A stretch of 64,000 nt of DNA. Source: Octopus bimaculoides (lineage: Eukaryota). A program made the translations under genes and the position numbers. The stretch is from assembly GCF_001194135.2 (NCBI RefSeq), contig NC_068989.1, positions 96,466,476 through 96,530,475 on the forward strand. Direction: 5' to 3'. Below the pieces are notes generated by a model that was not told the DNA's origin, made no database searches, and saw nothing but the letters and a program-made list of their open reading frames with translations. Below are positions 3,743 through 55,789 of the stretch, in pieces (within the stretch, counting starts at the first letter, position 1; each line of letters begins with the position of its first letter).

Positions 3743-5104
3743 TAGCAAGTTCGGAGCATTCTATTATTTGCCGAAAGTGAATACTCAGAACTCTGAAAGA
3801 AACTGAGTGGATTTGATACTAGATCCCCTTTTCTCATGACTTAAACAAATGAGGAAAGAGGGAGCTCAGCCTACCATGACTGGCATGAGGAGAAGACAGA
3901 GCAAGGTTCCGTTTGCGGAATAAAGCATCTTCGTTGAAAACAATGAAGGGTTTGGTTCCAGGAAAGATATTTGGTCACTGAACAATGTCTCAAATATTCT
4001 TATTCCTCTTCTGCCAATATAGGAAAAGCAAATACAGAAACAACAATGATGATAATTACTTATTCATTCACAAAAGATGTATTTTTAAATATGATTTCAG
4101 CATTTTTGTGTAGCATCAAGCTTCACCTTGCAGCTAATCGATCCAAAACAACCATTTTAGGGCAAAAAACTTTCCATAATTTCGTTGTATACCTTACATT
4201 CTTAATTCTAATTTCTCCATACTCTTGTAGCTAATTGAAATAAGGATTGCTCTAGAATTACGATGAATATTCAAATTTTCTGAAATTATCTTCATTTCTA
4301 AAAATTACTCTTCACTCCATATATTTGATCGTTATTTCATTAAGGTGTCATCATTAACTCACAGTGTTCTCAGAACTCATCAAAATTCTTCATAATCCTA
4401 GCCTACTTAGTGCAGTTAATTTTCTTTTTTAATTTCATCTTAAGGTTTTAAAGTTATCAAAATCCCAGGAACAAAAATTAGTTTTTTTTTCAATTCACAT
4501 TCTTTGGATTGAATCTCAGATTCATCAAATAATTTTTTATTTTTTCTCCTTAAATTCTGTTTAATTCTCCTTTTATTTTCCTCTGTCTTCAGAGCTTTGC
4601 TCATTTATAAGAAAATGTTTATGATTTCTTTTGAATTCGTATTTTCAGTTTCATATTTCTTCATTGTTGCTCCTTAGTTTTAGCATCCACACTTCCAATG
4701 CCACTTGATTTAGATGAAACTTTGTTGAAGCAGATTTTCTACAGTTGAATCTTCTTCCTGTCACTAACCATTATCCGTTTCCAAGAAAGGTAATATTTCC
4801 CCTCGTCCTTCAAACAATAGACAGCTCAATGGCCAGACATATTTAAACAAACATCACCGTTTGTATGGTGGTGACTTCTGTTTACACATTGCTCACCCGT
4901 GTCAGGACGAAGAGAAACACTTGCATGCACCAATAACAGTGAGTTCCTTCCTAATTTCATCTGAAACATTTCCCTTGCCAAGCATTCGTCAACCTGTGAC
5001 AAAGCAGAAGATATCAGCCAACAGGGTCCACACAGAGAGAACTGACCCTTAGCCATGGGGTTCTCAAGCAAACTCCTTAATCCTGTCATCTCACCTGCGT
5101 CTGT

Positions 5105-5361: not shown

Positions 5362-5440
5362 NNNNNNNNNNNNNNNNNNNNNNNNNNNNNNNNNNNNNNN
5401 NNNNNNNNNNNNNNNNNNNNNNNNNNNNNNNNNNNNNNNN
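5362..5440. other. Assembly gap inside (TA)n microsatellite
   Basis: N-run flanked by (TA)n on both sides. Other N-runs: 8067-8367, 9316-9325, 13767-13919, 18695-19002, 19560-20539, 29062-29071, 45110-45420. Confidence 0.99.
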
Positions 5441-6460: not shown

Positions 6461-6534
6461 TGTGCACACGTATGTGAGTGTAAGTATGTAGGTGTCTGTA
6501 TGAGTTTTGCTTCTTTTGCTACAACTCTAGGTAA

Positions 6535-6611
<77 letters not shown>

Positions 6612-7361: not shown

Positions 7362-8532
7362 TTACATATAGACACTACTGTATACATATATACACACACT
7401 CACACACTTACATACAGACATTGATATATCCATATCTACACACACACACTTACATATAGACAGGGAGAGATATACACCCACATATGCACATACATGTTAT
7501 CAGAGAGAAACGGATTTGGTAAAAATATCTGTAAATGATCTAAATATCCTTCCTGTAAGAATCTCACAAAAGACTTGAATAAACTGTCATTGCAATATTT
7601 GCTGTGTGCATTGTTGGAGCTGCAAACACCATTGCAGGTTTTCTAGCTTCTGCTATTATTTTGTACGGACACATAGGTTGAGTGACCAGTTAAAACCTGT
7701 TTCATGAATGTTCTTTGTTTAGGTCAACTTTTGAAAATCATTAAGCATGTCTTTTTATTTCTTCTTCCTAAGTTGTGAGTCAGTTTGTTAATTTCAGGCA
7801 TGTCTTTTAATATTCTTGCTTCTTTCCGAATTGCTAAGGCGCCATTGATGTAGCTGTAAGTTTTCAAGACCAAAGTTGTTCTGTTTTATTTCCTCCATAT
7901 TAACTGCTGTGTATTTAGTTTCTCTCATGTTAACTTCCTGATCTTTATCTTCTTTTTGTTTTGTTCTCTTTGTTTTTTACTTCCTTTTTCTAACCTTCTG
8001 AAAAGCTTCCTTTCACAAAATGTTTTACAGAAGAGATTGTGTATATATATATATATATATATATATNNNNNNNNNNNNNNNNNNNNNNNNNNNNNNNNNN
8101 NNNNNNNNNNNNNNNNNNNNNNNNNNNNNNNNNNNNNNNNNNNNNNNNNNNNNNNNNNNNNNNNNNNNNNNNNNNNNNNNNNNNNNNNNNNNNNNNNNNN
8201 NNNNNNNNNNNNNNNNNNNNNNNNNNNNNNNNNNNNNNNNNNNNNNNNNNNNNNNNNNNNNNNNNNNNNNNNNNNNNNNNNNNNNNNNNNNNNNNNNNNN
8301 NNNNNNNNNNNNNNNNNNNNNNNNNNNNNNNNNNNNNNNNNNNNNNNNNNNNNNNNNNNNNNNNNNNTATATATATATATCAGTTTAATACACAACCAAA
8401 AGAGCTGTTGATAGTTTCATGCTTTTATGATATTCTAACCATGCGTATTATAAAATACATCATTAATCTTCCACTGCATACTCATTCACACATATATAGA
8501 CTCACACACACATATACACTTGCATCTACACA

Positions 8533-9315: not shown

Positions 9316-9325
9316 NNNNNNNNNN

Positions 9326-11600: not shown

Positions 11601-11954
11601 AAATAAATGGAAAATTGATGCCAAAATAAGCTGTTACTGGTACCCAGTTTCTTCAAGTAACCCTGATGAAACTATCTTTGAACCTTCTTCATGCAGTTTG
11701 TGCTTTAAGGGTGGATGAGGGTGTAAGACTGAAGATATCTACAGAATTCCTGTGATAAGCAGTAACCTTCTGGTGCTATTAACTTTGAAAGAGATTATGT
11801 CTGGTGCAAGAAAATATTGACATTAGAAGATATTTATCTTCATAATCTGATAGAACATTAAGCAAAGTACCTTGTGGTATTTAGTCAGGCTTCTTACCAT
11901 ATTTCAGGAACTTAAACTTCCAACTTATCATCCATCTAGTCTTTGTGTGCCTTT

Positions 11955-12385
11955 AGCAGAAGAATTGTTCCACTGAGATGCAAGGATTCAGGTCAGGCCC
12001 ACCCCACCTGTCTTGTAAGCACCTGTATATACTGTCCATGAAGAGGCTTCTGGCTCCACCACCCCTCAGTTTGTTTCTGTCCGTTCCTTTTTGCAGTCTG
12101 TTTGATTCGTTTTGCTTGTTTGGTGGCAGTGGTTTCAAGTTCTTCATCTAATCCAGGTTTAATGCCGAGTTCCCTTGCGAATTTCCAAGCTTCCTTGACA
12201 ATGGAATGTGATCTTTTGCTGCTTTTATGTTTGCACACAAGCTGCAACATCCACTCCTCTCTACTAGATAAGTACCTGTTCATTGCTCTTGTGGAGGTCT
12301 CCGAGCACAGTTCTGCCTGCATCATTCCTCTCCCCACATTATGTCTAGGCAGGTACAGATGATCAACATCTGCTTCTGGGTTTGT
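11955..12385 (-). mobile_element. R4/Dong-type (RLE) LINE internal fragment
   Basis: Reads ADVDHLYLPRHNVGRGMMQAE...KPLHGQY, matching the post-RT HPxADVDRLYLPRxxGGRGL / KPLHGQY motifs. It begins directly after a (TAA)n/(GAA)n array at 12386-12503. Confidence 0.85.
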
Positions 12386-12397
12386 CTTCTTCTTCTT

Positions 12398-12502
<105 letters not shown>

Positions 12503-12784: not shown

Positions 12785-14575
12785 GGGTGATTCTTGCAGG
12801 GTATTTTTTTTATTTGATTTGATTCTCAGTTTGCATTGTTTTGAAGGAAGTTTTAGACACTTTCAAAGCTATCTTCTTGCAATGTTCAGTATCTCTTGCA
12901 TGTATTTACTTGATAAAAAAAGTCACATGTTGAAGAACTGCGAATTGAAATCCTGTGACTATTGCAGCACAAATGTGTGGGGCATTGATTTTACTCCTTC
13001 TTCCCTCATACGTAGCTTGTAAGAAGTGGTTAAAAAACAAAGATAAAGATTAGCACAGGTGTTCGTGATAGAATGAAAATCCTCTTCCGTAGATAGGATG
13101 ATGTTGACGAGTTAGTTTATGATGCTAACATTTGATTTTCTTACACAGACTTAAACTGTGAAACATCTTACAGTCTCAGAAATTATGAATTATCTTTAGA
13201 CTGTTAATGAGCACAATCAATTAAGAGCTAACAGTGAGAACAAAAACAAACAAAAAACGGAAAAAGAAAGAAATTTATCAGTAATCTTTATCATAGTATA
13301 TATTCCAAAAATAATAATTTACAAAATATTTTCACCAATTAGTTCTAAAGAATTAATTAAAGGTGGCAAAGATATCCTTTTCTTTATTGTTATTTTTTTT
13401 TTCTGGGTAATTTGTACATTATAATTCCTAATTGTTTTGTCAATAAGGCTAATTGTTTCATCATTAATGTTAAGTGTTTCTTATATCTTTATCGTCTATG
13501 AACTATTTCATTAATGAAGCTAAAAACATTTCATTATTCAGTATAGATATCACATCCATCATCATCTGCAATTGTTTTGCTTTATTTATTGTTTTCTTTT
13601 TTGTTTTCTTCAAAACTAATTTTCATATCCAGGATATTTTTAATATATATATCTATATTCTTTTTTTTTTTTTTGTATTTATAATCATTATCTTAATTAT
13701 CCAAGATAATTATTTCATGATCATTGTAACTCTGACTGTTCACACTTGAGATAAGCAATTCATTATNNNNNNNNNNNNNNNNNNNNNNNNNNNNNNNNNN
13801 NNNNNNNNNNNNNNNNNNNNNNNNNNNNNNNNNNNNNNNNNNNNNNNNNNNNNNNNNNNNNNNNNNNNNNNNNNNNNNNNNNNNNNNNNNNNNNNNNNNN
13901 NNNNNNNNNNNNNNNNNNNGATGCAAAATCAGCAATCAAAAATTCTAAAAACGGAATTGGTGTTGATTATCAATAATAGCTTTTCCATAGTAATATGGTG
14001 AGTTTCAGAAACAACTCAGTCATTTAAAAGCAACACAACTACAGTAAAATATAATTTTCTTTTTTTTACTTTTTCTTTTCTTTTCCATTTCCATTCTCTC
14101 AGAAATCAACTGATTTCGGTGGCAGCAAATTGTTATGATAAAAAAAATAGAAAAAGAAAATAAAAGAACAACATTACAGCAAAAGAGGAATTTTCTGAAT
14201 TACAAACAAAATCATTTTTTAAATAATTTATATTATCAGAAGTTAATGATTAAATAAAGAAAAGAATGACATAGTAGATTCGTACAATAATTACTGATTA
14301 TTTTAACTTTCGTGTGACATACATGGAATCAACCTCAGCATATAAGATTGATATTTATGCCAAAGAGATGAAATAAAAGGTCAATTTTAGTAACATCTGA
14401 CTTTAGAAACAAAAGTCAGTGAAAAGGGCAGGAAACAGAGGGATATATCTAAGGGTTTACTATATTTGCCCTCATTGCTCAGCTTCTGTAACCAAGGCTT
14501 TTGATGTTCAATGTTTCAATAGGCAGAAAACTGGAGGTACTTGTTTTGTTTCATACTTTTATTTATAACATGACC

Positions 14576-14644
<69 letters not shown>

Positions 14645-14646
<2 letters not shown>

Positions 14647-14825
14647 CATAATTCAACATCCGTTTTCCATGCTGGCATGGGTTGAACAGTTTGACAGGAG
14701 CTGAAGAGCAGCCTGGATCCATGTCTGTTTTGGCATGGTATCTAAGGCTGGATGCCCTTCCTAACACCAACCACTTTACAGAGTGTGGACTGGGTGCTTT
14801 TTAAGTGGCACCAGCACCCAGGAGC
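14645..14825 (-). mobile_element. RTE-tail SINE/LINE 3' end
   Basis: catccgttttccatgctggcatgggttgaac...ggatgcccttcctaacaccaaccac. The same family occurs at 15150-15400, 22760-22995, 23555-23708, 29500-29700, 36770-36920, 51120-51208 and 59360-59600. Confidence 0.8.
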
Positions 14826-17064: not shown

Positions 17065-18645
17065 ACGGTGGAGCTGATATTATTGGAAGCTGTGAGCGGT
17101 TCCCCTGAAGGAAGAGAGTATGGCTGTTTTAGTATTGACTTTCTTCCAAAATGCATCAGCTCAAATTTTTCCTCGTTCAGTTTCATTTTGTTTTTATCTG
17201 CCCATTGACTCACAGCTTATAGATCAGACTGGAGTTGGGTTCGGTCTTCTTCTTCTTTGATGATTTGCTGGAGCTTAGTGTCATCAGTAAATATTTTCAC
17301 TTTGAAGTGATTTACGACGCTGGAAAGGTCATTTATATAAATTATAAAGAGGAGCGAGCCTAAGACAGTCGCCTGAGGGACACTGGTGACTTTTGCTAGG
17401 CTTGAGTGGACTCCATCGACCACAACTTCTTGTGTTCTATTCTCCAGGAAATACTTAATCCAGTGTAGAAGTTTTCCCCAGATTCTAACATTTGCCAATT
17501 TTGTGAGTGAGATATTAAGGTCAGCCTTGTCAAACGCTTTACTGAAGTCAAGATATATGACATCAGTGTTCGAACCTGTTCCCAAGTCTTTAAGTATATC
17601 TTCAATGTGGTGTAAGAGCTGTGTTAGACAGTCCCTGCGACAGCGAAAGCCATGCTGGTTTGCATTTAGGAGTTTTGGGGTCTCCAGGAAGTCAGCTATC
17701 CTTGATCTTACCACTCTTTCAAACACTTTAATGATGTGGGAGATGAGTGAGATTGGGCGATAGTTGACTGCGAGGGATCTGTTTCCCTGTTTGAAAACCA
17801 GGATGACAGACTGGGATAGGAGCTGTTTGGGTATATAACCTGAGTCTAAAGAATTTCTCCAGAGGCTGGTCAGACGGACTGCAAGTTGGTGTCTACATTC
17901 CTTCAGGAGACTTGCCGGGAATCTATCAGGGCCTACAGCAGAATAGTATTTGACCTCATTTATTGCTGCTATGATGTCTGAAGCAGTGAGGGTTATGTCC
18001 GAGATTTCATGTTAGGAATCAACTTCATTCGCTTCTCTTACGTCAATATCAGTGGGATCACTAAAGACAGAGCAGTATTGTTTCTGCAGTATTTCTGCCA
18101 TTTCTTTAGCATCGTGTTGGGGAATGTCGTTATCATCGATCAATGGTCCAATGGGTGAGACAGCGGTTCTATTCTTAATTGCATAAGAATAAAACACTTT
18201 TGAGTTCTGTTTGATGTTTTTGATTACTCACTGTTCCTCCGCAGCTCTTTGATTTTCAATGGAGGCTTTCATGTCGGTCTGCAGATGAAGTTTTTCCAAC
18301 TCCAGCCGTTTCATTATTGTTGACTGTGGATGTTGTATGTGGGAGTATTTTCATTGGTTGATTTTTTTTATTGAGTCTTTTGATGCGCCTGATGAGTGTT
18401 TTTTTCTTTTTAGGGAGCCGGTTTCTGTTTGTGTTAGTGGATTTCGTAGGAGCGTGTTTTGAGCATGTATAGGTGACAATGTTCTCAAAGTGTTGCCATG
18501 CAGTCTCAATGTGAGTGGAACTGAGAGTGAAAGACCAATCGATGAAGGACAGATCCTTTCTGATTGCTCCTCAGTCTGCTTTGTGGAAGTTTATGTTGTC
18601 AAATGAGTGACGTGGACCGGGATTGGCTGGTTTGGTTTTGATATT
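17065..18645 (-). mobile_element. CR1/L2-like non-LTR retrotransposon, decayed RT region
   Basis: ORF 17217-17726 reads NQHGFR...VIYLDFSKAFDK...VPQATVLGSLLFIIYINDL...IFTDDTKL (RT domains 3-5; FADD is mutated to FTDD). Flanking frames read SQWADKNKMKLNEEKFELMHFG and FYSYAIKNR...KEMAEILQKQYCSVFS. Multiple stops and frameshifts. Confidence 0.92.
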
Positions 18646-19018
18646 AATCTCTTTTACTCTTCTACTTGTTTCAGTCATTTGACTGCGGCCATGCNNNNNN
18701 NNNNNNNNNNNNNNNNNNNNNNNNNNNNNNNNNNNNNNNNNNNNNNNNNNNNNNNNNNNNNNNNNNNNNNNNNNNNNNNNNNNNNNNNNNNNNNNNNNNN
18801 NNNNNNNNNNNNNNNNNNNNNNNNNNNNNNNNNNNNNNNNNNNNNNNNNNNNNNNNNNNNNNNNNNNNNNNNNNNNNNNNNNNNNNNNNNNNNNNNNNNN
18901 NNNNNNNNNNNNNNNNNNNNNNNNNNNNNNNNNNNNNNNNNNNNNNNNNNNNNNNNNNNNNNNNNNNNNNNNNNNNNNNNNNNNNNNNNNNNNNNNNNNN
19001 NNCGGATGGCAACACCAG

Positions 19019-19559: not shown

Positions 19560-21195
19560 NNNNNNNNNNNNNNNNNNNNNNNNNNNNNNNNNNNNNNNNN
19601 NNNNNNNNNNNNNNNNNNNNNNNNNNNNNNNNNNNNNNNNNNNNNNNNNNNNNNNNNNNNNNNNNNNNNNNNNNNNNNNNNNNNNNNNNNNNNNNNNNNN
19701 NNNNNNNNNNNNNNNNNNNNNNNNNNNNNNNNNNNNNNNNNNNNNNNNNNNNNNNNNNNNNNNNNNNNNNNNNNNNNNNNNNNNNNNNNNNNNNNNNNNN
19801 NNNNNNNNNNNNNNNNNNNNNNNNNNNNNNNNNNNNNNNNNNNNNNNNNNNNNNNNNNNNNNNNNNNNNNNNNNNNNNNNNNNNNNNNNNNNNNNNNNNN
19901 NNNNNNNNNNNNNNNNNNNNNNNNNNNNNNNNNNNNNNNNNNNNNNNNNNNNNNNNNNNNNNNNNNNNNNNNNNNNNNNNNNNNNNNNNNNNNNNNNNNN
20001 NNNNNNNNNNNNNNNNNNNNNNNNNNNNNNNNNNNNNNNNNNNNNNNNNNNNNNNNNNNNNNNNNNNNNNNNNNNNNNNNNNNNNNNNNNNNNNNNNNNN
20101 NNNNNNNNNNNNNNNNNNNNNNNNNNNNNNNNNNNNNNNNNNNNNNNNNNNNNNNNNNNNNNNNNNNNNNNNNNNNNNNNNNNNNNNNNNNNNNNNNNNN
20201 NNNNNNNNNNNNNNNNNNNNNNNNNNNNNNNNNNNNNNNNNNNNNNNNNNNNNNNNNNNNNNNNNNNNNNNNNNNNNNNNNNNNNNNNNNNNNNNNNNNN
20301 NNNNNNNNNNNNNNNNNNNNNNNNNNNNNNNNNNNNNNNNNNNNNNNNNNNNNNNNNNNNNNNNNNNNNNNNNNNNNNNNNNNNNNNNNNNNNNNNNNNN
20401 NNNNNNNNNNNNNNNNNNNNNNNNNNNNNNNNNNNNNNNNNNNNNNNNNNNNNNNNNNNNNNNNNNNNNNNNNNNNNNNNNNNNNNNNNNNNNNNNNNNN
20501 NNNNNNNNNNNNNNNNNNNNNNNNNNNNNNNNNNNNNNNCAGCAGTCATATCAGGTGACATTAAAAATATGCCTATATATCTTTGACACTATATATATAT
20601 TTTTTCTACTAAATTATTATTTCATTTTCTACTGATGCAGAAAATGTCTAGTTCCCACCCCACTCGTTTGACTGTTTTACTATTATTTTCCTTCATGTTT
20701 CATATTTTTTCAATATTTTTATTTTATTTTCTCTTTGCTGGTTCATTGTAGATTTAAACAGAAAGCCATATGTATGTGTATATATATACATATATATAAA
20801 GCCATAATATGGTAGAAAGGCAGGCATTTAAATCTGCTATAATCACTCTAGCATTTTGTTGATTTAGGAAGTAAGAAAAAAGAAGAAATAAATAAAAGAT
20901 TGAAATTTGCATCAATGCAACATTATGCTGATGTGCAGCAGTAGTTTATGCGTTTTGTTGTTCTAAAGTGCTAAACATAAAGCCAGCATAAAGCTTGAAG
21001 AAGGTCAGAAAATATATTTGTCGAAACACAATATCTTCAAAGTGGAAAATAGAAAAAAAAATGGAATATTATCGATATAAAAGAGAAGTCAGCAACCATA
21101 TCATTACATGAAAATCGAGCGAAAATCAGATGCAATATAAATTAATTTTATATGAAAATTATTAAGCATAAAAACATGTTTACGGCCCTTTTTTA

Positions 21196-22748: not shown

Positions 22749-23183
22749 CCCTTGTCTTGACCTCGTGTGATGATTGTAAATGAGCATCATCAACATACAG
22801 TTGATGGTGTTCATTTCCAGTCTTCCATGAAAAACGTGTTTGGCCATGGTGGGGAGTGGGGTGGAAATATTACCTTGTTCAGAAACAGGTGAGGGTTGAC
22901 AACAGGAAGTGCATCCGGCTGTAGAAAATCTGCTTCAACAAATTCCATCTGACCCATGTAAGCATGGAAATGTGAACATTAAATGATGATGATGAAAGCA
23001 TCACAAAATTCCACTCTCATAGGGGTTAGGAAAAGTTTAAGGGAATTTTGGTGTTGGTCAATTTAACATTTCATTCAAATGGGGACTGGATTAACAAATA
23101 TTTAGGAAACACTGCATTAAAACATTTCTTATTCAAAATCCTTTCATAAAACGAACAAAAAATTAATTATTGGATTAATTGCA

Positions 23184-23208
23184 TTTTTTTCTTCTTTTTC
23201 AGGTAAGT
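23184..23208 (+). promoter_or_regulatory. Candidate recursive splice site (ratchet point): 3' splice site immediately followed by 5' splice site
   Basis: TTTTTTTCTTCTTTTTC-AG|GTAAGT: a 17-nt pure pyrimidine tract, CAG, then a perfect GTAAGT, with a TTAAT branch-like motif just upstream. Confidence 0.55.
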
Positions 23209-23554
23209 TCTTCAATATTATTGTGAATTTGGAAGTTCTCGTTAAGTATTGTTGGTTTTTAACTCCATCAAACAGGTATGACTGGAACCTTTTTTTTTTT
23301 TTCATTTTTCATCACCATGACTACATATATTGTGTGTGTGTGTGTGTGTTTAGTATTTTTGTCTCATTGTGGCTACATAACATTATATATTTTGTTTCCT
23401 AAGATTCTTGATATGAAACCAGGTGTTGAAACAGATATAATTTTGTACTTTGGTAGAGTCATTTTGCCAATAAGAATATATGCATTGTAGCTTACTTTTT
23501 ATTGTTAATTAATTAATTTATTCATTAATTGGTTGGTCAAAGTATTTTGATGCA

Positions 23555-23708
23555 CAGTGGTTGGGGTTAGGAAGGGCATCCAGCTGTAGAAACTCTGCCA
23601 AATTAGATTGGAGCCTGGTGTTGCCATCCGGTTTCACCAGTCCTCAGTCAAATCGTCCAACCCATGCTAGCATGGAAAGCGGATGTTAAACAATGATGAT
23701 GATGATGA
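23555..23708 (+). mobile_element. Young RTE-tail SINE/LINE 3' end with (GAT)n tail
   Basis: cagtcctcagtcaaatcgtccaacccatgctagcatggaaagcggatgttaaacaatgatgatgat is near-identical to the reverse complement of 51120-51208. Confidence 0.85.
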
Positions 23709-24230
23709 CAGCTTTTGCAATATTTTCTTCTTTGTGCAACTTTCTTGCAAAGTTGCAGAAAGAGGACACACAGACCACAGTTATGTGGTGAAAAACTTTA
23801 ATTAGTTAATTAAATAATTTACAAATTAATTAATTAATAATAAAATGAACTACGGCCAGTGTATATATTTTTATGAGAATAACCCTTTCAGAGTACATAA
23901 TCATTTAGCACAATTGTATGTTTCTATGTGTGAGATGAGTCATTATAAATGCAATTATAATTTTACCAACTAATTAATCTTATTTTTATAAACGAAAATT
24001 TGTTTTTTAAATATTTAAATCATCAATACTTTTCAATCAGTTTCTTCTCTAAACATCGTAAGATGTCTTATTCCTGGATATGTATTTAGTACCAAGTTGG
24101 ATTTGAAATAAAGATCTTTATTTTTGAAGATAGTCACACACTGACACCTTAGTCTAAGTGTATCTGGGTTGAGGAATCAGGCAGTCCATAAGGATCAAAG
24201 ATCAATCTGATCAATAAGTAATCGAAAGAT

Positions 24231-26133: not shown

Positions 26134-27069
26134 TTTTTGGGAATAACTTGAAGCACGCACAAAGTTATAAATAATAGCATGTATTATTTTTGATGTCAAC
26201 AACATACGTATATAGTCTGTGTGTTTGTGTGTGTATGCATAATCTCAATATGTATTTGTATGAGAATGAGAGGAAAATAAGCTATTTGTAAATTAGATTA
26301 TAATAAATGAGAAATATTCTATCAAAGATACTTTTACTATCTGTATACGATATCCATGTGTCCATGTTTTGTGTTGGTATAATTTTTGTTTGTGTATACA
26401 CACACTCACACACACAAACGTGTGTGTGTATTGGTAAGTGGCTGGGGACCAAAGCAGATTTATTATTTTATGACAGCAAACCGAATTTCATAAGCTTTGT
26501 TACAAAACCTAATCTGTGTTCTGTTATCGTATCTGTTTGAATCTTTATTTCAATATTTTTTGTTATGAACCAAAATTGGTTTCATACAATGAAGATTATG
26601 ATTGCCATTGTTTGTGCTGCTATTGTAATTATTCTGACTCCTGCTGCTGCTGCTGCTGCTCCTACTATTACTACTGCTATACTTACTGTTGTTTTGACAG
26701 ACAAAAAAAAACAAATAAATATGTTACATGAAATTGTAATGTGTGGAAGAAGAGATGTGAATGAGTTCAGAATGAATTTTATTCAGCTTCAGAATAATGT
26801 TCTCATCTTCAAGCACGGGAACATTTTGATGTCTGCTTTTTCACCAATTCTTGCATGGATCTGATGCAATTTGTTGAAATAGATTTTCTATGGCTTAATG
26901 CTCTTCCTCTTGTCAAACCCTTTTTGAGAAACGAACTACTTTCATTTGTGTTTTCAACACAAGCGGTTTAGTGGCCTGACATGTTTTCATTGCAGATTGC
27001 CAGTGAATGACACCACTTTCTTACAAGAGTAATGCACTGTATGAAATCAATGGGAAACTCTCATGCATG

Positions 27070-28310: not shown

Positions 28311-29016
28311 GTAAATATTCACATCCACAGAAATATCATCTCATCTTCAGTCAAAGGTAAGATGTAGATATTTTTCCAAAAAGAAACATGACTCAGTTAT
28401 CATTTGTTTACCATTGCCAGAAAAAAAACTCACTGAGAAAGATTTTTTACAGTTGGATGCCCTTCTTGTTGCCAACCTTCACCAGTTTCCAAGTAAGTTT
28501 ATATTTCCCAAAGTCCTTTGAAGACAAACAGTAGAGGAGCCAAACATGCTTTTGTGGAAGACGGGGATCAACAAATGATATATTCACACAAGTATGTTGT
28601 ATATGTGTGTTTGTATGCATGGAAGCCACACACACTTCATATCCTTTGCAATCATTTTGACACTTGATATGTGGTACACCATGCACCTGTTCAGGAAACA
28701 TTGATTTGATGGAGAGAGAGAGAGGGAGAGAGAGAGGGAGAAAGAGAGAGGGAGAGAGAGAGGGAGAAAGAGAGAGAGAGCTGATGTACAACACATACAT
28801 TTAATTATTACAGATAAATCATTTGCGCAGGTTTGTTCAGCAAGAAATTACAGAACCATCTTTCTTGGACTATGAGAGACAACCATTTACCATTATATAC
28901 ATATCTGCAGAGTGGTTGATGTTAGGAAGGGCATTCAGCCATAAAAACTCTGCCAAAATAGACACAGTAGCCTAGGGTTGTCTTCTACCTGGTTGACTCC
29001 TGTCCAACCATGCCCG

Positions 29017-29061
<45 letters not shown>

Positions 29062-29071
29062 NNNNNNNNNN

Positions 29072-29117: not shown

Positions 29118-29696
29118 CTTGCTCTTCCCTCTGACTGGGTAACCAAGTATCTCTGGTACATCAGCACACCTGTTTCAGACCTCTTTCTTGTACCTCTCTC
29201 TCCCTCTCATTCTCTCCCTCTCATTCTCTCCCTCTCTCTCTCTCCCTCTCCCTCTCCCTTCCCCCCTCTCTCTCTCTTCTCTCTCTGGTTCTATAGCAAG
29301 ACATCTCTCTATTTCTCTGCCACATTCTAACCTTTCATCATTTCACACCAAATCACCTCCTCCAATACTCCCTCCATTATAGCAAGACACCTGTTTCTGC
29401 CTCTCTGCCCCTCTCTTTCATCCTCTGACACAAGATCCCCTCCTCAAATACCACCTCCCCGCTCTCAAAATTCCTTGTCTTGCAAATTACTTTGTGACCC
29501 TGCCAGTGCTGGTGCCACATAAAAAGCACTGAGTCCACTCTGCTGGGTGGCCAGTGTTAGGAAGGGCATCCAGCCATAAAAACTCTGCCAAAACAGACAC
29601 AGTCACCTGGGGTAGACTTCTACTTGGTTGGCTCCTGTCAACCATCCTACCCATGCATGCATAGAAGATGGACACTAAATGATGATGATGCTGATG

Positions 29697-29729
<33 letters not shown>

Positions 29730-30359
29730 TATATTTATATATGAGAAAGGGAGAGACCAAGAAAGATAGTTTGGGATAGAAAGTTTCTGCCTGAGTTTTG
29801 TGCTAATGTCTCAACCCTGCAGGAAATATTGAGACTCAAAATGTTAAGTTTGAATCATTTCGGCTGTCATAAAGTGTTAAATTATGAAACTAAACAAATC
29901 ACACAATATTTTGTTTGGAGCAAAAGAATTGTCTCATAGAAACGATATTGTGGAGTTCTTGAATCAATTATTTTGAAATTGAAAAGAAAATTTCTAACAC
30001 AAATTACTTCTTGATGCTTCAGAAAATATATTTTTTTTATTCAATCTTTTGTCTTTTTGAATGAAGATGATTAGAAAAAAAAGTTAAATACTCCACAAAA
30101 GAGAAACCAGTAGGTGTATTCCAAGAATACTTTTTTCTAGTGTGTTGGTGGTGGTGAGGGGCTGAGATGAAGAGATTCAGAGATCTTAATCCGTACAAGT
30201 ACTTTTCTAATGTGGTTTTTCTAACATTCTATTTTATTCAGATATTTCTCTCTCTCTCTCACTCTCACTAGTTTTCTCATTATCTATCTCAATCTCTTTC
30301 CCTCTCTCCCTCTCTGACTCTTCTCTCTCTCACTCTTCTCTCTCTCACTCTCTCACTCT

Positions 30360-30391
<32 letters not shown>

Positions 30392-30744
30392 TCTCTCAAT
30401 CTCTCTCTCTCTCTCTCTCTCTTCTCTTTTTTGCTTATTTTCCTCACAATTTTCCTTGTTATTTTCTCTTCTTTGCTCTCTCTTTCTCTCTCTGTTTCTA
30501 AATCTCTTTTTTCACTGCTCTTTCCCTCTCTCTCTCTTATTTGCTCTCTCTTTCACTCATTTTAATTATTTTTACCAAATTTCATTCTCTTTTATTTTTT
30601 TTTCCTCTTTATACGTATTATTTCCAAAACAAATTTTTATGAATTGCTAAAGGGGAATGACTTAAACTCTATGGAAAAAATAAAATATGATAAAATCAAT
30701 GCAACAAACCAAATTACTTTAATCTGAACAATTTTTTCCAATCT

Positions 30745-31140
30745 GATACTATGGTATTTAGTGTTTAAGAGTGTCTTTTGGTAGAGTTACCAAAGGTTTG
30801 TTGATTACGGGTACAGTTATCATTCTTAGATGCCATAATTTTGAGACCTGTTTTTTTTTTTAAATATCTAGTCTATTATTTTGGAGAGCTTGATCAGTTT
30901 GAACACTAAAGTCCCAAAGAATGGTGGTGCCTTTATTTTCTGCTACATTGGCAGGTTTATGTTTCCACTTGTTCTTCTCATATGGGAATTCAAACTGATG
31001 GCATAAGAACCTGTGCCAATACTGACTAAGTCTATCATGGAGATTAATATATTCATTTGAGACTACCATCCAGAGAGGAAATGGTCATTTGTAGTTTCTA
31101 ATGAGCAGACACTGATACTGAGCTACTATAATGATGCACA
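30745..31140 (-). mobile_element. R4/Dong-type LINE 3' fragment (RLE domain)
   Basis: EYINLHDRLSQYWHRFLCHQF...ILWDFSVQTDQALQNNRLDI, then KLWHLRMITVPVI. It starts immediately after the (TAA)n at 31146-31185. Confidence 0.88.
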
Positions 31141-31141
31141 C

Positions 31142-31184
<43 letters not shown>

Positions 31185-31185
31185 G

Positions 31186-31727
31186 AGTGAGTGAGAGAGC
31201 AGTGCATGCCATCAAAGTGACACTGGGGTAAAATATTCGAAGCCCAGTATACCCATTACGACTACCCGTCTGATAAGAGTAACCAGGCACATGCATCACA
31301 ACCATATGTACGCAACATGGTGATCTCATATCAAGAGAAACAGCACATGACCTTGTAGGTGGATCCCAGTTAGAATTTTCTTCAGGTCGAGTAGCCCATC
31401 CTGCTCAAAAGGTCCCTGAATAAGGTTTGTTTAAGGATGTTGAGCAAAACACCCATGTTTCCAAATGTGAATTATTCAAACCCCAAAGAATTCCTCTCAA
31501 CACACACGTGGCTATAATGCTCCCCCACTACTTCTGCTCATGAGCAGAGATGTACATATCGTCAGCCACCAAGGGACATGCTTAACTAGTTAAGGTCAAA
31601 TAACTGACAAGCAAATCTGTGGTATTGAGCAAAATATTTGCTGTAGCCCATCTTTTATACCAAGACAAAACAATGTACATGGTAACACTTCCAATCAGTT
31701 AAGATCAGAAGCCATGAGAGCCACTGT
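31186..31727 (-). mobile_element. About 540-bp non-coding TAA-tailed interspersed element
   Basis: Ends in ...ctctctcactca-(ATA)n on the minus strand. A second, partial copy with the same end and tail lies at 50777-51000. No ORF homology is visible. Confidence 0.75.
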
Positions 31728-31739
31728 CAAGAAAACTCA

Positions 31740-32240
31740 CAGCTTATTTTGTGGATATTATGGGAAGTGTCAGCTGTCCACAGCCAGCAGACTAATGTGA
31801 TATTTGTTTACTGGTCATGCTTCAAGAACCTTGCAAAGAATTCTTCCAATTCCAAGCATTGCTGATTTTTGTAGACGTTCTACCTTCACACTGGCACCAA
31901 TCTTTTTCAGACATGTTGGTGCTGATACTTCCAAATGCCCCAATTACTATTGGTATCATGTCTACTCTCCTCATTGACCACAACCTTCGCATTTCCCACT
32001 TCAAATCGTCAGAGTTGTTTACTTTTTCTTCTTCTTTCACATCGATCCTGTTGTCGCCGGGGCATGCTGTGTCGATTATCATACATGTTCTTTCTTTTTT
32101 ATTCACCACAACAATGTTCAGTTTCTGATGTCTGGTCAGGTGATTGCACTGAATCATTGCATCCCACAGGACTTTGTAATTCTCATTCTCAGGGACTCCT
32201 TCTGGAGTTTTCTCATACCACGTCTTCGCTCTTTGTACAG
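31740..32240 (-). mobile_element. R4/Dong-type LINE 3' fragment (RLE domain)
   Basis: KTWYEKTPEGVPENENYKVLWDAMIQCNHLTRHQKLNIVVVNKKERTCMIIDTACPGDNRIDVKEEEK...IPIVIGAFG (decayed PD..D..K RLE motif). Confidence 0.9.
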
Positions 32241-32254
32241 AGCTCCCAATGTAT

Positions 32255-33505
32255 CATTATTATTATTTTCTCTTTATTACAGGTTTTGTTGGAGCTCCTG
32301 GAGTCTTACATGCATAGCAGGCTTGTTATCTGCAGCCTCCGGTACCATACCATTCGTTCTTTTCGGCTATTTAATACTTTCCTGATTATTCTGGCCGTGC
32401 CAAGGAGGCAAACCTTTTGTAACAGTTCTACTGGACTCTCTATTCCAGTTTCCTTTATAATTTTCTTGATGCCTTCTGATACTGTTCCCAAGGACCCAAC
32501 AATAATTGGCACTATCTTCACCTTCTTCATTTTCCATAGCCAGGCTTTTTCGTACTTAAGACAGTTATATTTATTTTTTCACCTTCCTTCTTGACCATTC
32601 ATGGGTCAAAGAGGCATGCAGCATCAACTACACAGCATATGTGGTGCACCTTGTCCTCCACCATTAGGTCCGGTCTGTTATGTTCTAGCACCAGATCTGT
32701 TTGGATTGGGAAATCCCAGAGGATTTTGCTAGTCTCCGACTCTGCCACTCTCTGCAGTTTGTGCTCATATTATGTCTTGTCTCTCTCTAACCCCCCCACT
32801 TTTCACACAGTTTCCGATGTAGCACTTTCACTATCTGATTGTGTTTCCACAACTTGTTGTGGTTTTGGGCAAGTCTTGGGTATTCGTTCATGATACGGTC
32901 AATGGTTTTGTCCACTCTGTTGCAGATGCGGCACAGCAGAGACACTTGTTCATTCCTAAGGTTGACCCTCCAGTTCGTGGCCAGAGCTTGGTCATGCATT
33001 GCCAGTATATAGTGCTCTCGGTCTCTTTTTTTAGGGTTCCTTTCATCAGCCAATCCCATCTATTTTTTTCCAGCAACCTCTGCTGTGGTTACATAGAATT
33101 GATTGTATAGTCCCTTCTTTGGTAATTCTTCTTCATGTCCTTTTTTGTACTTCTTCCTTTGTTTTCCCTTTTTTTCTCTGCTCTCAATACTCTTTCATTC
33201 CTAACTAACATTAGCAAGGTTTCCTTACTTGGGGCTAGATATCATCTCATTAAGCTTTTGAGTTTGATACGTACGCTGTCTTCCACACTTATCAGTCCCC
33301 TTCCTCCATTTGCTCTCTTCATGCATAGGCAATCAGTGTCTGCACATGGATGATGGACTCCATGCATCATTGAGAGCTTTCTTGACTTCCTATCCATCTT
33401 CTTTTACTCTTCTTCTGTCCACTTCAGGATTCCAGCATCATGCAAACTACTGTGACTGCATGCAAGTTTATTGCCAAAATTATGTTTCTAGCATTCAGCT
33501 TTGAT
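32255..33505 (-). mobile_element. R4/Dong-type LINE, 5'-truncated, decayed
   Basis: SKLNARNIILAIN..., HHPCADTDCLCMKRANGGRGLISVED, LKKETESTI, LCRICNRVDKTIDRI (CCHC remnant), VPIIVGSLGTV...CLLGTARIIRKVLN, followed by a 3' UTR and a short TAA tail. Confidence 0.92.
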
Positions 33506-33527
33506 GCCTATTATTATTATTATTATT

Positions 33528-33562
<35 letters not shown>

Positions 33563-33574
33563 TATTATTATTCA

Positions 33575-34170
33575 TTTATTTATCTATTTATTTATTTTCC
33601 ACTTGATTTCCATTTTATTTCACTTTCTGGCCAGATCTCAACCAAAGACTTAATACATTTTAACCTTACTGACAAACAGTGATTTTCGTCACTACTTTTG
33701 ACAGATTCACTGCAACAAGCTTGAAGGAGTCTCTCTCTACCCTCATTTAGTTGGGCTGGGCTGGTCACCAACTCAGTATTTCTTTCATACTCAGTCACCC
33801 ATGTTCTAATTAAGACACCATCTCTGGAGGCATTGCTGACCAAGGCTAAAGAGGTACCCTCACCCCATAAAGTAGACTTAAACTCACCAGAAGCCAACCT
33901 GGTCTCGGGATGGGATTACAGGCTCCATGCCTTATCCAACAGTGACCTGAAGGTAGTTGTGGTTATGGGTAACTTCATTATTTCCTGTCTTTAAGGGGCA
34001 AACATTCTGTAGAAACTCTACAGAACGTTCTATTCCAATCTCCTTCAGCCATCTGTTTCTATCTTTACGCACAGTTCCTTTTTTGACCATTCCAACTGCT
34101 TCTACAATCATTGATATTCTAACTGTCTTGTGATGCCAAATTGTTTTGGACTTCAATGAGGAAATATTAG
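33575..34170 (-). mobile_element. R4/Dong-type LINE 3' end plus probable UTR
   Basis: KTIWHHKTVRISMIVEAVGMVKKG...EIGIERSVEFLQNVCPLKTG, followed downstream by a (TAA)/(TGA) array at 33510-33575. Confidence 0.7.
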
Positions 34171-41307: not shown

Positions 41308-42489
41308 CTGTAGAGAGAGAAATTGAAAGAGGAAGAGAGAGAGGGAGAAATTTTCTGTCACTTACTTGAAGCCTTCCTGAATGTAAAACTACAGTAGCAC
41401 TAATTTAGAAAGCTACTGTAAAATACAGTTAAGGAAAGATTAAATATAATTAAGAACAGAATTTTAAAATTTCACTTTGAAATATTTGATAATTCCATAT
41501 TTCAAGTGAAAATACCTTTTTAAAAACTGAATATGGACACCAGGTGATTCATTTTAGTTTGAAGTGTATGTGATGTGGTATATTAGGTATGACAATGTTT
41601 TCCAGGCATCATTTAAGCCAGATAGTCTAAAGCCAACCTTCACACATTTCTCCGATAATTGAAATTGTTCTCACATAATGGCAGATTTAACCAGGCCAAG
41701 GTTGTATTGTAGTTTGCTTGAAGCATTGCAAAATATACAAAAATAAGTGATTGAAAAAGGTACAACAACACGGATGGGGAGAGATTAAATATAAATGAGA
41801 ACACAGTTTCTTCTTTTAGCTGAAATTGTTAATTTTTTTGTGGTGATGGAATGCTCTTTTCGAAAGAATGAGGTGAACAGAAGAATATGTTTGGATCCAT
41901 TGTGGTTTTGAGCCTGGATGAAGTGCTAAGATGTTTGGAATGACATTTTTCCCAGTAGCAAAGTAAAAGAAGACTGAAAACTCATTTGAAGAGTTCTACA
42001 TATTTTTGTTTATTATTAGCTGAAGTTTACAAAGTGACATTGCAGCTGAGAGTTCCATATGTTCTCTGACTTATTAATTAAAGACAGAGAATTGGCAAAA
42101 CTCTGAGTTGTAATGTAGCATTGTAACCTTAACATATTAACTAAAAGACACACAGACATATATTGATAAAACAACAAACACACACACACACATGAGACAG
42201 ACACTTTTCTACACATGTATTTGTACCATATATGTATGTGAATAAAATTTAGTCCAAACCTGTCTGTCTCAGACTCTAACCTTAACTGAACTTCATTGTC
42301 CTTGCTTTCTTTCTTTCCCAAAAGCTCAAACTCCATAACATATTTTACCAATTCTTGTGCCTTGCCTCCACTGTATAATTTGCCTAACAACCATATCCAA
42401 CGCTTTGTTGGTACCAAAATAGCAATTTTCTCTCAAATCATCGAGGTAAAACTATTGGGAGGGGAAGAGAAGGACAAGAGAAATATAAT

Positions 42490-43830
42490 GTGGTTGTTCC
42501 TGCAGACCTTAATGACATTACAGTCTTCAAGAAGGGAGACTGGACAATCTGTGGGAACTAATTGTGGCATCTCAGTTCTCAGTGTCGCTGGGAAGTTTTT
42601 CACCAGGATCCTGCAAGATACATTATTGGTCATTGCTGAAGAAGTTTTTCCAGAGTCGCAGTGGAGCTTCTGCCCCACCTGTGGTACCATTGACATGGTC
42701 GTTTGTACTGACTTTCTCCAATAAAAGGCCTTAGAGCAGAGAAAGCCCATACTTTCTGTGCTCTGAAACTTGGAGAAAGCTTTCAACAGCATACCAAGAC
42801 CTACAATGTGGGCCACCTCAAAGCATTTTGGTTTTCTTGACCACTTTATGAAGCACATCCAGGCTCTACATGATGGACTGTCTGGCCAGATCATTGCCAA
42901 GAATGCTCTCTCTCCAGTTCTTTCCCAATTACAACTGGCTTGAAGCAAAGATGTGTCTTTGCTTCCACTTTGGTTTCTCTCTACCTCTTTGCCATGACCC
43001 ATGAGATCCCTAATTGGGCTCCTGGAGTAGACATCCATTACATAATGGATAGAGGACTTTTCAACACTGCCCAGTTCAGAGCCTGTCAATTTACCACCAC
43101 CTTGGCTAAAGTACATGAACTGCAGTACATGGATGGCAATACTACACCTGTGCACTAAGTTTTTAATCTTTAGGGGTCTATGAACCTCTTCAAAAACTTG
43201 TATTCCTGCTTTGGTTTGACCACAAATACAAACAAGACAAAGATCCTTGCACAAGGAGTCTCTGGCCAATCTCCCACTGGCATCAGTGACACAAGGTTAT
43301 ATGGCACTATCCTGAACCATGAAGCTACCTGTCCAATAGTTGCACCATTCAGAAAGACATTGAGAATAAGATCAATGCATCCCATTCTGCGTTTGGAAAA
43401 CTCTCAAAATAAGTCTTTCTAAACCATGACCTCACCATCCAAATGAAAATCAGGTATTCTAAGCTGTCATCCTTTCCACATTCCTCTACTGATGTGAGAT
43501 GTGGGTGTTGTATCAACATGACTTGAAGAAGAAAATAGAACATTTCCGACAGAACAAACTTTGTGTAATCATGAGGATTTGATGGAAAGCCTATGTTATG
43601 AGATGAAGAAGTGCTGCTCCAGACCAGACTGCCCTGCATTGAGGCCACCGTGGCACAGCACCACCTCTGCTGGTTGGGATACCTCAAATGTGCCTGCCCT
43701 GTCAACTTTGGGAAATTGGCCCCAGGTACCAAACAACACAGCGCCCCAAATTCCATTTTCAGGACCAGCTCAAGGTCACCCTCCTGTTGCATTCCTAGAT
43801 AAATTTCTAGCTCTTTAGCCCTTATCAATG
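42490..43830 (+). mobile_element. RTE-clade (BovB-like) LINE, decayed RT region
   Basis: KKGDWTICGN..GISVLSVAGKFFTRILQ...EEVFPESQWSFCPTCGTIDM, LEKAFNSIPR, GLKQRCVFASTLVSLY, VHELQYMDG, GLTTNTNKTKIL, QHHLCWLGY. Many stops and frameshifts. Confidence 0.92.
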
Positions 43831-47462: not shown

Positions 47463-47891
47463 CACCTTTTCTCTCAATAGCAATGTTCCACCTTCAAATG
47501 AGAGCATGTATCCCTGCCCCGTAAAATTCTGTTGACTGTTCTTTGAGCTACTTCTTCACCACCTCCACACTCACCAGATTTAGCGCTTTCAGACTATCAT
47601 CTCTTCAGCGCCACGAAAGAGGGTTTGAGAGGTAAACATTGTTCCAGTGACAAGGAAGTGAAAATTGTAGTGAAGAAGTGACTCAAAGAACAGTCAACAG
47701 AATTTTATGGGGCAGGAATACATGCTCTTATTCGAAGGTGGAACAATGCTATTGAGAGAAATGCTAACTTTGTTGAGAAGTAGGGATGTGATCTACAGAG
47801 GACCAACTTCATTTTGATGTATGATACATGTTCCTGTGTTGGTAATTATACCTGTCCTAAACAAAATGGCATTTCTTTTTGACTCACCCTC

Positions 47892-51120: not shown

Positions 51121-51151
<31 letters not shown>

Positions 51152-51229
51152 GTTTAACGTCCGCTTTCCATGCTAGCATGGGTTGGACGATTTGACTGAG
51201 GACTGGGGAAATAAAGAGAGAAATGAGTT

Positions 51230-55735: not shown

Positions 55736-55775
<40 letters not shown>

Positions 55776-55789
55776 CCATGAAAATACTC

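What the first reader, a model, noticed from the sequence alone, without database searches (positions are those of the whole stretch)
23170..23210. Perfect ratchet-point (recursive splicing) motif in an exon-free stretch
Seen: TTAAT-TGCA-TTTTTTTCTTCTTTTTC-AG|GTAAGT, a strong acceptor whose AG is immediately followed by a perfect donor (a zero-length exon). It is the only such strong AG|GTAAGT junction I found by eye on either strand, and it sits in unique AT-rich sequence rather than in a repeat. Established: this is the consensus of Drosophila ratchet points, used to remove very long introns stepwise. Inference: the window lies inside a giant plus-strand intron processed recursively. I am not aware of this having been characterised in cephalopods.
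Basis: partly seen in the sequence, partly recalled or inferred. Interest (0 to 1): 0.7.

Follow-up and report, generated by a model that had tools for sequence, protein, structure and literature searches.

The report
Candidate recursive splice site, octopus-like DNA
A textbook "ratchet point" motif (a splice acceptor fused to a splice donor) really is at 23202/23203 with the extra sequence parts that recursive splicing needs. Such a motif turns up by chance in about 1 of 100 windows of this size, and nothing here could show that the site is transcribed, used or conserved.

Summary
Window 23175-23208 (+) reads TTAAT-TGCA-T7CTTCT5C-AG|GTAAGT. It is the only CAGGTAAGT on either strand and the only AG|GTRAGT with a real pyrimidine tract. 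With my own approximate scoring matrices it ranks 2nd of 3451 acceptors and 1st of 3572 donors on the + strand.

It is not overwhelming statistically. A swap-null gives about 0.01 equally good sites per 64 kb, which is a few hundred per 2-3 Gb genome.

Further sequence-level predictions of the recursive-splicing model could have failed but are met:
- TT at -5/-6.
- Branch-point-like TTAAT with the A at -25.
- A 97-nt AG-free zone upstream.
- A weaker donor (CAG|GTATGA) 73 nt downstream, closing an AT-rich, stop-containing cryptic "RS-exon".

A coding exon ending at 23202 is excluded. No coding exon was detectable anywhere in the 64 kb. The + strand has a T>A excess of 4.9%.

Transcription, strand, junction reads, lariats and cross-species conservation could not be tested with these tools. 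I rate a functional ratchet point at about 0.4, chance at about 0.4, and an ordinary expressed exon at about 0.15. If real, it is a new member of a known kind in a new phylum. Interest is modest (0.33).

The parts
23163..23167 (+). Alternative branch-point-like TTAAT (YTNAY), with the A at 23166, which is -37 from the acceptor
   Evidence: This is motif level only and usage is untested. Fly ratchet-point branch points lie at -36 to -21, so this one sits just outside that range.
23175..23179 (+). Branch-point-like TTAAT (YTNAY), with the A at 23178, which is -25 from the acceptor
   Evidence: It lies within the -36..-21 range of mapped fly ratchet-point branch points. It carries little information in AT-rich DNA.
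23105..23200 (+). AG-free zone upstream of the acceptor; the previous AG starts 97 nt upstream, at 23104
   Evidence: P(gap>=97) is 0.012 among all AGs and 0.059 among AGs with a pyrimidine-rich upstream.
23184..23200 (+). Polypyrimidine tract TTTTTTTCTTCTTTTTC (17 of 17 pyrimidines), with T at -4, -5 and -6 and C at -3
   Evidence: The upstream score is reached by only 17 of 7336 AGs on both strands. TT at -5/-6 is found in 99.5% of fly ratchet points.
23201..23202 (+). Acceptor AG
   Evidence: acceptor score 10.8 bits, rank 2 of 3451.
23203..23208 (+). Ratchet-point donor GTAAGT, directly abutting the acceptor
   Evidence: donor score 13.1 bits, rank 1 of 3572 GTs.
23203..23275 (+). Candidate cryptic RS-exon: 73 nt, 30% GC, length not a multiple of 3, stops in 2 of 3 frames
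   Evidence: [quoted passage not shown]
23276..23281 (+). Downstream, weaker donor CAG|GTATGA that would close the cryptic exon
   Evidence: 8.8 bits (top 1% of GTs) against 13.1 bits for the ratchet-point donor. The chance of a donor this good 25-150 nt after a random position is 0.058.
23290..23302 (+). T13 run beginning 14 nt after the downstream donor. It may be a U-rich intronic enhancer of a weak donor (an inference from general knowledge of TIA-1-type sites), or merely a homopolymer.
   Evidence: not tested.

Best explanation
This is a recursion-competent splice element of the Drosophila 'ratchet point' type, on the + strand, inside a long intron of a gene whose exons lie outside the window.

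Proposed mechanism (inferred, not shown):
1. U2AF binds the 17-nt U/C tract, and U2 pairs at the TTAAT branch site (A at -25).
2. U1 at the downstream donor (23276) defines a 73-nt cryptic RS-exon.
3. The upstream exon is spliced to 23203, removing the first part of the intron as a lariat.
4. That junction regenerates a 5' splice site, (exon end)|GTAAGT.
5. The regenerated donor is stronger than GTATGA. It out-competes GTATGA, so the cryptic exon and the rest of the intron are removed in the next step. No trace remains in the mRNA.

Shown here: the sequence parts and their rarity. Inferred: transcription, strand, use of the site, and skipping of the cryptic exon.
For: - The motif is present exactly as described, and its joint score is an outlier (23.8 bits against a next-best 17.0).
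- A swap-null expects 0.0095 equally good sites per 64 kb.
- TT at -5/-6, as in 196 of 197 fly ratchet points.
- Branch-like A at -25, inside the published -36..-21 range.
- A 97-nt AG-free zone, P=0.059 among pyrimidine-rich AGs.
- A downstream donor at +73 nt that is weaker than the ratchet-point donor, P=0.04-0.06 by chance. This matches the cryptic RS-exon plus donor-competition model.
- The cryptic exon is out of frame and contains stops, as published for fly RS-exons.
- A coding exon ending at 23202 is excluded.
- No recognisable coding exon in the 64 kb on either strand. This fits a very long intron, but it fits intergenic DNA equally.
- T>A skew of +4.9% on the + strand after repeat masking, with 13 of 16 bins positive. 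That is the direction expected for the sense strand of transcribed DNA in other animals (general knowledge, not calibrated for octopus).
Against: - There is no evidence of transcription, strand, junction reads, lariats or conservation. None could be obtained.
- About 1 window in 100 carries an equally good motif by chance, which is hundreds per genome.
- The supporting features (downstream donor, AG-free zone, skew) were examined after seeing the sequence. Each is only P of about 0.05, and multiplying them overstates the case.
- The scoring matrices are generic ones written from memory, not octopus-trained.
- Part of the T-skew comes from minus-strand LINE fragments (bins 16-20 kb and 32-36 kb).
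- How many ratchet points a cephalopod genome has is unknown. Large vertebrate genomes have few strongly defined ones: nine noted definitively in mammals, ten reported in mouse (abstract), and lungfish similar to human.
- An exon-free 64 kb is equally expected for intergenic DNA.
Confidence: 0.4

Rival explanations
1. The motif is a chance juxtaposition. A T-rich tract, which is common in this 33% GC, T-skewed DNA, happens to end in CAG and be followed by GTAAGT. The site is either untranscribed or ignored by the spliceosome and has no function.
For: - The swap-null expects 0.0095 sites at least this good per 64 kb. That is about 300-450 per 2-3 Gb genome, comparable to or larger than the number of true ratchet points known in any genome (counts).
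- The + strand carries many acceptor-like pyrimidine tracts: 19 with at least 16 of 18 Y, and 87 with at least 14 of 18.
- CAGGTAAGT alone is expected 0.43 times per window.
- The site sits among SINE copies and microsatellites in apparently junk DNA.
- No gene could be found in the window.
- The extra features are each only P of about 0.05 and were chosen post hoc.
Against: The same junction is the top donor and the second-best acceptor of the strand. It also has a suitably placed weaker donor (P about 0.05), a long AG-free zone (P about 0.06) and TT at -5/-6. If these are treated as independent, the joint chance expectation falls to the order of one to a few tens per genome.
Confidence: 0.4
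2. 23203-23275 is an ordinary expressed exon that merely begins with GTAAGT. It could be an alternative, poison, UTR or lncRNA exon, that is, an 'expressed RS-exon' in the vertebrate sense. It would be included in at least some transcripts. A less likely variant is that 23202 is the end of a non-coding first or 5'-UTR exon.
For: - A strong acceptor and a top-1% donor 73 nt apart make a well-formed exon.
- One of the three frames is open through it.
- Mammalian genomes may hold thousands of expressed RS-exons but very few fully suppressed ratchet points.
Against: - The exon is 30% GC, has stops in 2 of 3 frames and has a length that is not a multiple of 3. It is not coding-like.
- Donor competition favours the much stronger GTAAGT (13.1 against 8.8 bits), which predicts skipping.
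- For an exon ending at 23202: stops occur in all three frames within 82 nt, there is no AG acceptor within 97 nt, and there is no ATG. Only a non-coding exon is possible.
Confidence: 0.15
3. The motif is carried by an unrecognised transposable element or other repeat family whose consensus contains splice-site-like sequence. It would then be present in many copies genome-wide.
For: The window is dense in repeats: SINE-like copies 200 nt upstream and 350 nt downstream, and LINE reverse-transcriptase fragments on both strands. Uniqueness could be checked only inside this window and against one 20.6-kb O. sinensis locus.
Against: 23000-23320 has no second copy in the 64 kb although the SINE families recur 5-6 times. 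It has no match in the O. sinensis locus L001, which shares other repeats at up to 86% identity.
Confidence: 0.05

Closest known systems
Drosophila intronic ratchet points (zero-nucleotide recursive splice sites with a cryptic RS-exon, for example in Ubx, kuz, Bx and luna)
   Same: - Juxtaposed acceptor and donor, (Y)n-CAG|GTAAGT.
- A prominent T-rich tract with TT at -5/-6.
- A branch-like A within -36..-21.
- A short, out-of-frame, stop-containing cryptic exon closed by a weaker downstream donor.
- At least 23 kb upstream and 40 kb downstream without a detectable exon. This fits host introns of 11-133 kb and removed segments of 2.6-64 kb.
   Different: - No evidence of use, of the host intron or of conservation, and ultraconservation is a hallmark of fly sites.
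- The branch-like motif is TTAAT.
- The cryptic exon is 73 nt, somewhat longer than the 'about 50 nt' typical in flies.
- The organism is an octopod-like mollusc, where the process has not been described.
Vertebrate recursive splice sites and RS-exons in long neuronal genes (Sibley et al. 2015; Blazquez et al. 2018, as summarised)
   Same: The RS-exon is recognised by exon definition, and competition between the regenerated donor and the RS-exon donor decides skipping or inclusion. The setting is a large, repeat-rich genome with long introns.
   Different: Vertebrate fully suppressed sites are very few: nine noted definitively and about ten in mouse (abstract). Most RS-exons there are expressed exons. 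Whether this 73-nt segment is ever included is unknown.
Motif-only recursive splice site prediction in the locust NPF1 230-kb intron (PMC8892266)
   Same: It is a candidate in a non-model invertebrate with a large genome. It was called from a branch site, a polyT/C tract and the AG|GT motif using the fly matrix.
   Different: The locust site lies in a known intron of a known gene and had indirect biochemical support (U2AF65 RNA immunoprecipitation). Here not even the host gene is known.

Membership tests
Drosophila-type intronic ratchet point | A strong 3' splice site directly abutting a strong 5' splice site (Yn-NYAG|GTRAGT) | tested here: met
   17-nt Y tract, CAG|GTAAGT. Rank 2 of 3451 acceptors and 1 of 3572 donors with an approximate scoring matrix.
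Drosophila-type intronic ratchet point | TT at positions -5 and -6 (196 of 197 fly sites) | tested here: met
   ...TTTTTCAG|, with T at -4 to -8.
Drosophila-type intronic ratchet point | A branch point (usually A) 21-36 nt upstream of the acceptor | tested here: inconclusive
   TTAAT with A at -25, and a second with A at -37. This is a motif match only. It is easily met by chance in AT-rich DNA, and use needs lariat reads.
Drosophila-type intronic ratchet point | A cryptic RS-exon closed by a downstream donor that is weaker than the ratchet-point donor | tested here: met
   CAG|GTATGA at 23276, 73 nt downstream, 8.8 against 13.1 bits. Chance is 0.04-0.06.
Drosophila-type intronic ratchet point | A cryptic exon that is non-coding: out of frame and/or with premature stops | tested here: met
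   73 nt, stops in 2 of 3 frames.: 30% GC.
Drosophila-type intronic ratchet point | Location in the sense strand of a long (>10 kb) intron of an expressed gene | not testable with these tools
   No annotation and no RNA data. Indirect evidence only: no exon found in 64 kb, and a T>A skew of +4.9% on the + strand.
Drosophila-type intronic ratchet point | Exon-to-ratchet-point junction reads, saw-tooth nascent RNA coverage, and lariats to and from the site | not testable with these tools
   No RNA-seq access.
Drosophila-type intronic ratchet point | Strong evolutionary conservation of the junction relative to its flanks | not testable with these tools
   No cephalopod genome DNA search was available. 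Attempts failed: ORFs spanning or next to the site are not in the protein collection; an exact-motif scan of metagenome contigs gave 0; the only O. sinensis locus reached is not orthologous.
Expressed RS-exon (vertebrate type) | An exon that starts with a donor consensus and is present in mature transcripts | not testable with these tools
   The sequence allows a 73-nt exon. Inclusion in mRNA is unknown. The composition is not coding-like.
Ordinary coding exon ending at 23202 | An open reading frame running into the donor from an upstream acceptor or start codon | tested here: not met
   in-frame stops within 24, 53 and 82 nt, and no ATG.: the nearest upstream AG is 97 nt away.

The most novel reading that the evidence does not exclude
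Cephalopods use Drosophila-style constitutive ratchet points to remove giant introns stepwise. These are zero-length recursive splice sites with a suppressed cryptic RS-exon. This site would be the first example in a mollusc or lophotrochozoan. Together with flies and vertebrates, that would argue that the mechanism is ancestral to bilaterians and is re-used where neuronal genes grew very long.
Probability: 0.37. Interest if true: 0.55.

Novelty: new member of a known kind. Interest (0 to 1): 0.33.

Why it matters
Recursive splicing has been documented in Drosophila and vertebrates, and predicted in locust. In the held literature it is undescribed for any mollusc.

Octopods combine a large repeat-rich genome, very long introns and a complex nervous system, and recursive sites elsewhere concentrate in long neuronal and developmental genes. 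A validated site would extend the mechanism to a third major animal lineage. It would also give a concrete locus for asking whether large-genome invertebrates follow the fly regime (hundreds of conserved sites) or the vertebrate regime (few).

A single unvalidated motif does not answer any of this. The result is also expected from phylogenetic bracketing, so the surprise value is limited.

Tried and rejected
**1. Finding the host gene**
- Pfam scan of all non-low-complexity ORFs of at least 55 aa. The + strand gave nothing; the - strand gave only RVT_1 at 17.2-18.0 kb.
- Splice-site plus ORF exon scan: 14 weak candidates, none protein-like.
- Amino-acid-composition screen: the top hits are microsatellite translations and TE fragments.
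- Homology search of the only protein-like + strand ORF cluster (56.2-56.9 kb): no hit in 5.8 billion proteins.

**2. Cross-species conservation**
- Exact look-up of ORFs spanning or adjoining the site: not on record.
- Exact scan of the 34-nt motif in JGI metagenome contigs: 0.
- Fetched the O. sinensis locus of the best named RT homolog, hoping for orthology. It is a different copy (RT 68.5% DNA identity, no synteny), although it shares repeats at up to 86%.

**3. Intronic ncRNA as a strand marker**
- No Rfam family and no tRNA in the window.

**4. Rejected readings and approaches**
- A coding exon ending at 23202.
- A repeat-borne motif, which has no second copy in the window or in L001.
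- An assembly artefact: the nearest N gaps are 2.6 kb and 5.9 kb away.

**5. Considered but not run**
- A long concatenated ORF query against the protein database. It risked a candidate explosion and swamping by TE hits.
- Calibrating T-skew and splice matrices on annotated octopus genes. That needed a further 13-CPU-hour search for a likelihood ratio of only about 2.

**6. Literature**
- The Burnette 2005 paper, for sense/antisense motif rates, is not held.

Full report
**Observation**

The reported sequence is present at the stated coordinates. It reads TTAAT (23175-79), TGCA, a 17-nt uninterrupted pyrimidine run TTTTTTTCTTCTTTTTC (23184-23200), AG (23201-02) and, directly abutting, GTAAGT (23203-08).

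CAGGTAAGT occurs only here on either strand. The 9-mer alone is not unusual: 0.43 are expected, and 33 of 100 shuffles have at least one. Adding the tract (Y12-N-YAG|GTRAGT) gives one hit against none in 100 shuffles. The window holds three AGGTRAGT, and only this one has a pyrimidine-rich upstream.

I wrote generic metazoan scoring matrices from memory, so they are approximate and not octopus-trained. With them the acceptor ranks 2nd of 3451 AGs and the donor 1st of 3572 GTs on the + strand. The joint score of 23.8 bits is well clear of the next best on either strand, 17.0.

**How unusual is it?**

Dinucleotide shuffles destroy the T-runs that are abundant in this DNA, so I used a swap-null. 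It multiplies three quantities: the fraction of real AGs with an upstream score at least as high (17 of 7336), the fraction of real GTs followed by RAGT (73 of 6757), and the number of AGGT tetramers (380). The result is 0.0095 sites per 64 kb on both strands.

Roughly one window in a hundred therefore shows an equally good motif by chance. That is about 300-450 per 2-3 Gb genome.

**Surroundings**

- The window is 33% GC and has eight N gaps and many microsatellites.
- It carries a LINE reverse-transcriptase fragment on the minus strand at 17.2-18.0 kb (RVT_1, E=2.6e-19).
- The best named homolog of that fragment is an Octopus sinensis protein, at 64% identity.
- The O. sinensis locus of that homolog is not orthologous, but it shares other repeats with the window at up to 86% identity. 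This supports an octopod origin; the species was not identified.
- The site lies in about 550 nt between two SINE-like copies (about 22770-22995 and 23551-23708, both +). Their relatives recur 5-6 times in the window.
- 23000-23320 itself has no second copy in the window or in the O. sinensis locus.

No coding exon could be found anywhere in the 64 kb:
- Pfam found nothing on the + strand and only the RT on the - strand.
- A splice-site plus ORF scan gave only weak, non-protein-like candidates.
- A composition screen found only microsatellite and TE translations.
- The one protein-like + strand ORF cluster, at 56.2-56.9 kb, has no homolog in 5.8 billion proteins.
- There is no Rfam family and no tRNA.

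'Exon-free' is therefore supported. It fits a giant intron and intergenic DNA equally well.

**Tests of the recursive-splicing model at sequence level**

Published fly ratchet points have TT at -5/-6 in 196 of 197 cases and branch points at -36 to -21. The current model requires a short cryptic RS-exon closed by a downstream donor that loses to the stronger regenerated donor. [quoted passage not shown]

Here the following hold:
- T occupies -4 to -8.
- A YTNAY match, TTAAT, puts an A at -25, and another puts one at -37.
- The previous AG starts 97 nt upstream. P=0.059 among AGs with pyrimidine-rich upstreams.
- CAG|GTATGA at 23276 scores 8.8 bits, in the top 1% of GTs, against 13.1 for the ratchet-point donor. 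It closes a 73-nt segment with 30% GC, stops in two frames and a length that is not a multiple of three.
- A donor that good within 25-150 nt of a random position has P=0.058.

For coding exons it fails: all three frames hit stops within 24, 53 and 82 nt, no AG acceptor lies within 97 nt, and there is no ATG.

The + strand also carries a T>A excess of 6.9% raw and 4.9% after masking tandem repeats, homopolymers and within-window repeats. Thirteen of 16 four-kb bins are positive. One O. sinensis stretch with no other called gene shows 1.9%.

In other animals the sense strand of transcribed DNA is T-rich. That is general knowledge and I could not calibrate it for octopus. Two of the strongest bins coincide with minus-strand LINE fragments.

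**Weighing**

The extra features are those the model predicts, and each could have failed. Each is only about P=0.05, and I examined them after reading the sequence.

My rough likelihood ratios are about 10 for the downstream donor, about 2 for the AG-free zone and about 1.5-2 for the skew. I set these against about 400 chance motifs per genome. On that basis, function beats chance only if the genome holds on the order of 100 or more strongly defined ratchet points.

That number is more than 500 in flies. In mammals only nine are noted definitively, and about ten are reported in mouse (abstract). The lungfish preprint finds human-like levels despite giant introns. For cephalopods the number is unknown.

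I therefore put a functional ratchet point at about 0.4 and pure chance at about 0.4. An ordinary expressed or non-coding exon using the same sites gets about 0.15, and an unrecognised repeat about 0.05.

**Mechanism if functional (inferred)**

1. U2AF binds the U/C tract and U2 binds TTAAT. U1 at 23276 defines the 73-nt cryptic exon, perhaps helped by the T13 run 14 nt downstream.
2. The upstream exon is ligated to 23203, releasing the first intron segment as a lariat.
3. The regenerated (exon end)|GTAAGT out-competes GTATGA. The cryptic exon and the remaining intron are then removed, leaving no mark in the mRNA.
4. Weakening GTAAGT should force inclusion of a frame-breaking 73-nt exon, as shown for fly Bx and kuz.

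**Comparison and novelty**

The element looks and would work like a Drosophila intronic ratchet point. All five sequence-level criteria were examined: four are met and the branch-point one is inconclusive. The three criteria that actually define membership could not be tested. These are location in a sense long intron, RNA evidence of use, and conservation.

No paper in the held library links recursive splicing to octopus or mollusc, and the single hits for cephalopod and for squid are unrelated. If validated, it would be a new member of a known kind in a new phylum. Because the mechanism exists in both insects and vertebrates, its presence in cephalopods would be expected rather than startling.

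**Verdict**

This is a reasonable candidate worth a look in total RNA-seq and in an octopod genome alignment, but not more than that. Interest is 0.33.

Noticed in passing
window 22770-22995 (+) and 23551-23708 (+); relatives at about 4688-4800 (-), 14645-14775 (-), 26847-26919 (-), 28906-28962 (+), 29556-29697 (+), 43942-43981 (+), 51135-51211 (-), 59360-59646 (-): A SINE-like repeat family ends in a (GAT)n-type tail ('...catggaaa...ttaaatgatgatgatga') and recurs about ten times in both orientations. Two same-orientation copies bracket the candidate site. There is no orientation bias that would reveal a host-gene strand.
   Followed up: partly
window 17220-18570 (-): A degraded LINE. It has a 264-codon open frame with an RVT_1 domain (E=2.6e-19), followed upstream by frame-shifted ORFs. 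The closest named relative is Octopus sinensis LOC115213219 (64% identity). The closest hits overall are unnamed ENA contigs at 57%.
   Followed up: yes
window about 11950-12500 (-), 29400-33900 (-), 42300-43900 (+), 47578-47631 (+): Further TE remnants recognised by eye only: several minus-strand fragments with the 'KILWDF..QTD...NRPD...ERTC.IIDVA.PGD' retroelement C-terminal motif, a plus-strand LINE RT fragment ('GISLLSVAGK...ESQ.GF.P..GTIDM'), and a mariner-like 'LSDYHLF' remnant. None reached Pfam thresholds.
   Followed up: no
window 54000-60000: This stretch has strongly positive GC skew (+0.16 to +0.36 per 2-kb bin), unlike the rest of the window. It includes a cluster of overlapping + strand ORFs (56180-56884, up to 135 codons) that has no homolog in 5.8 billion proteins and no Pfam hit. 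Its origin is unexplained.
   Followed up: partly
window 1-64000, + strand: There is a window-wide T>A excess (6.9% raw, 4.9% after repeat masking, 13 of 16 bins) with no net G/C skew. The + strand also has about twice as many pyrimidine-tract+YAG sites as the - strand (87 against 43 at 14 or more of 18 Y). This could reflect + strand transcription or TE orientation, and it is not calibrated for octopus.
   Followed up: partly
window 6506-6538 (+) and 57266 (-): These are the next-best AG|GT junctions. TTTGCTTCTTTTGCTACAACTCTAG|GTAAGGAT at 6530/6531 (+, 15.2 bits) lies 16.7 kb upstream of the main site and runs straight into a (TA)n microsatellite. TCTCTGCAG|GTGAGGAA is at 57266 (-, 17.0 bits, weak tract). 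Neither is convincing.
   Followed up: no
window 23437-23530 and 23812-23904: A 71%-complementary AT-rich inverted repeat of about 95 nt flanks the SINE-like copy at 23551-23708. It may be a MITE-like element or a palindromic insertion target, or just low-complexity AT-rich sequence.
   Followed up: no
window 5362-5440, 8067-8367, 9316-9325, 13767-13919, 18695-19002, 19560-20539, 29062-29071, 45110-45420: Eight runs of N (10-980 nt) are present. Those whose flanks I saw in the ORF translations (8067-8367, 18695-19002, 45110-45420) are bordered by microsatellites, which is typical of a short-read scaffolded draft assembly. None is within 2.6 kb of the site.
   Followed up: yes
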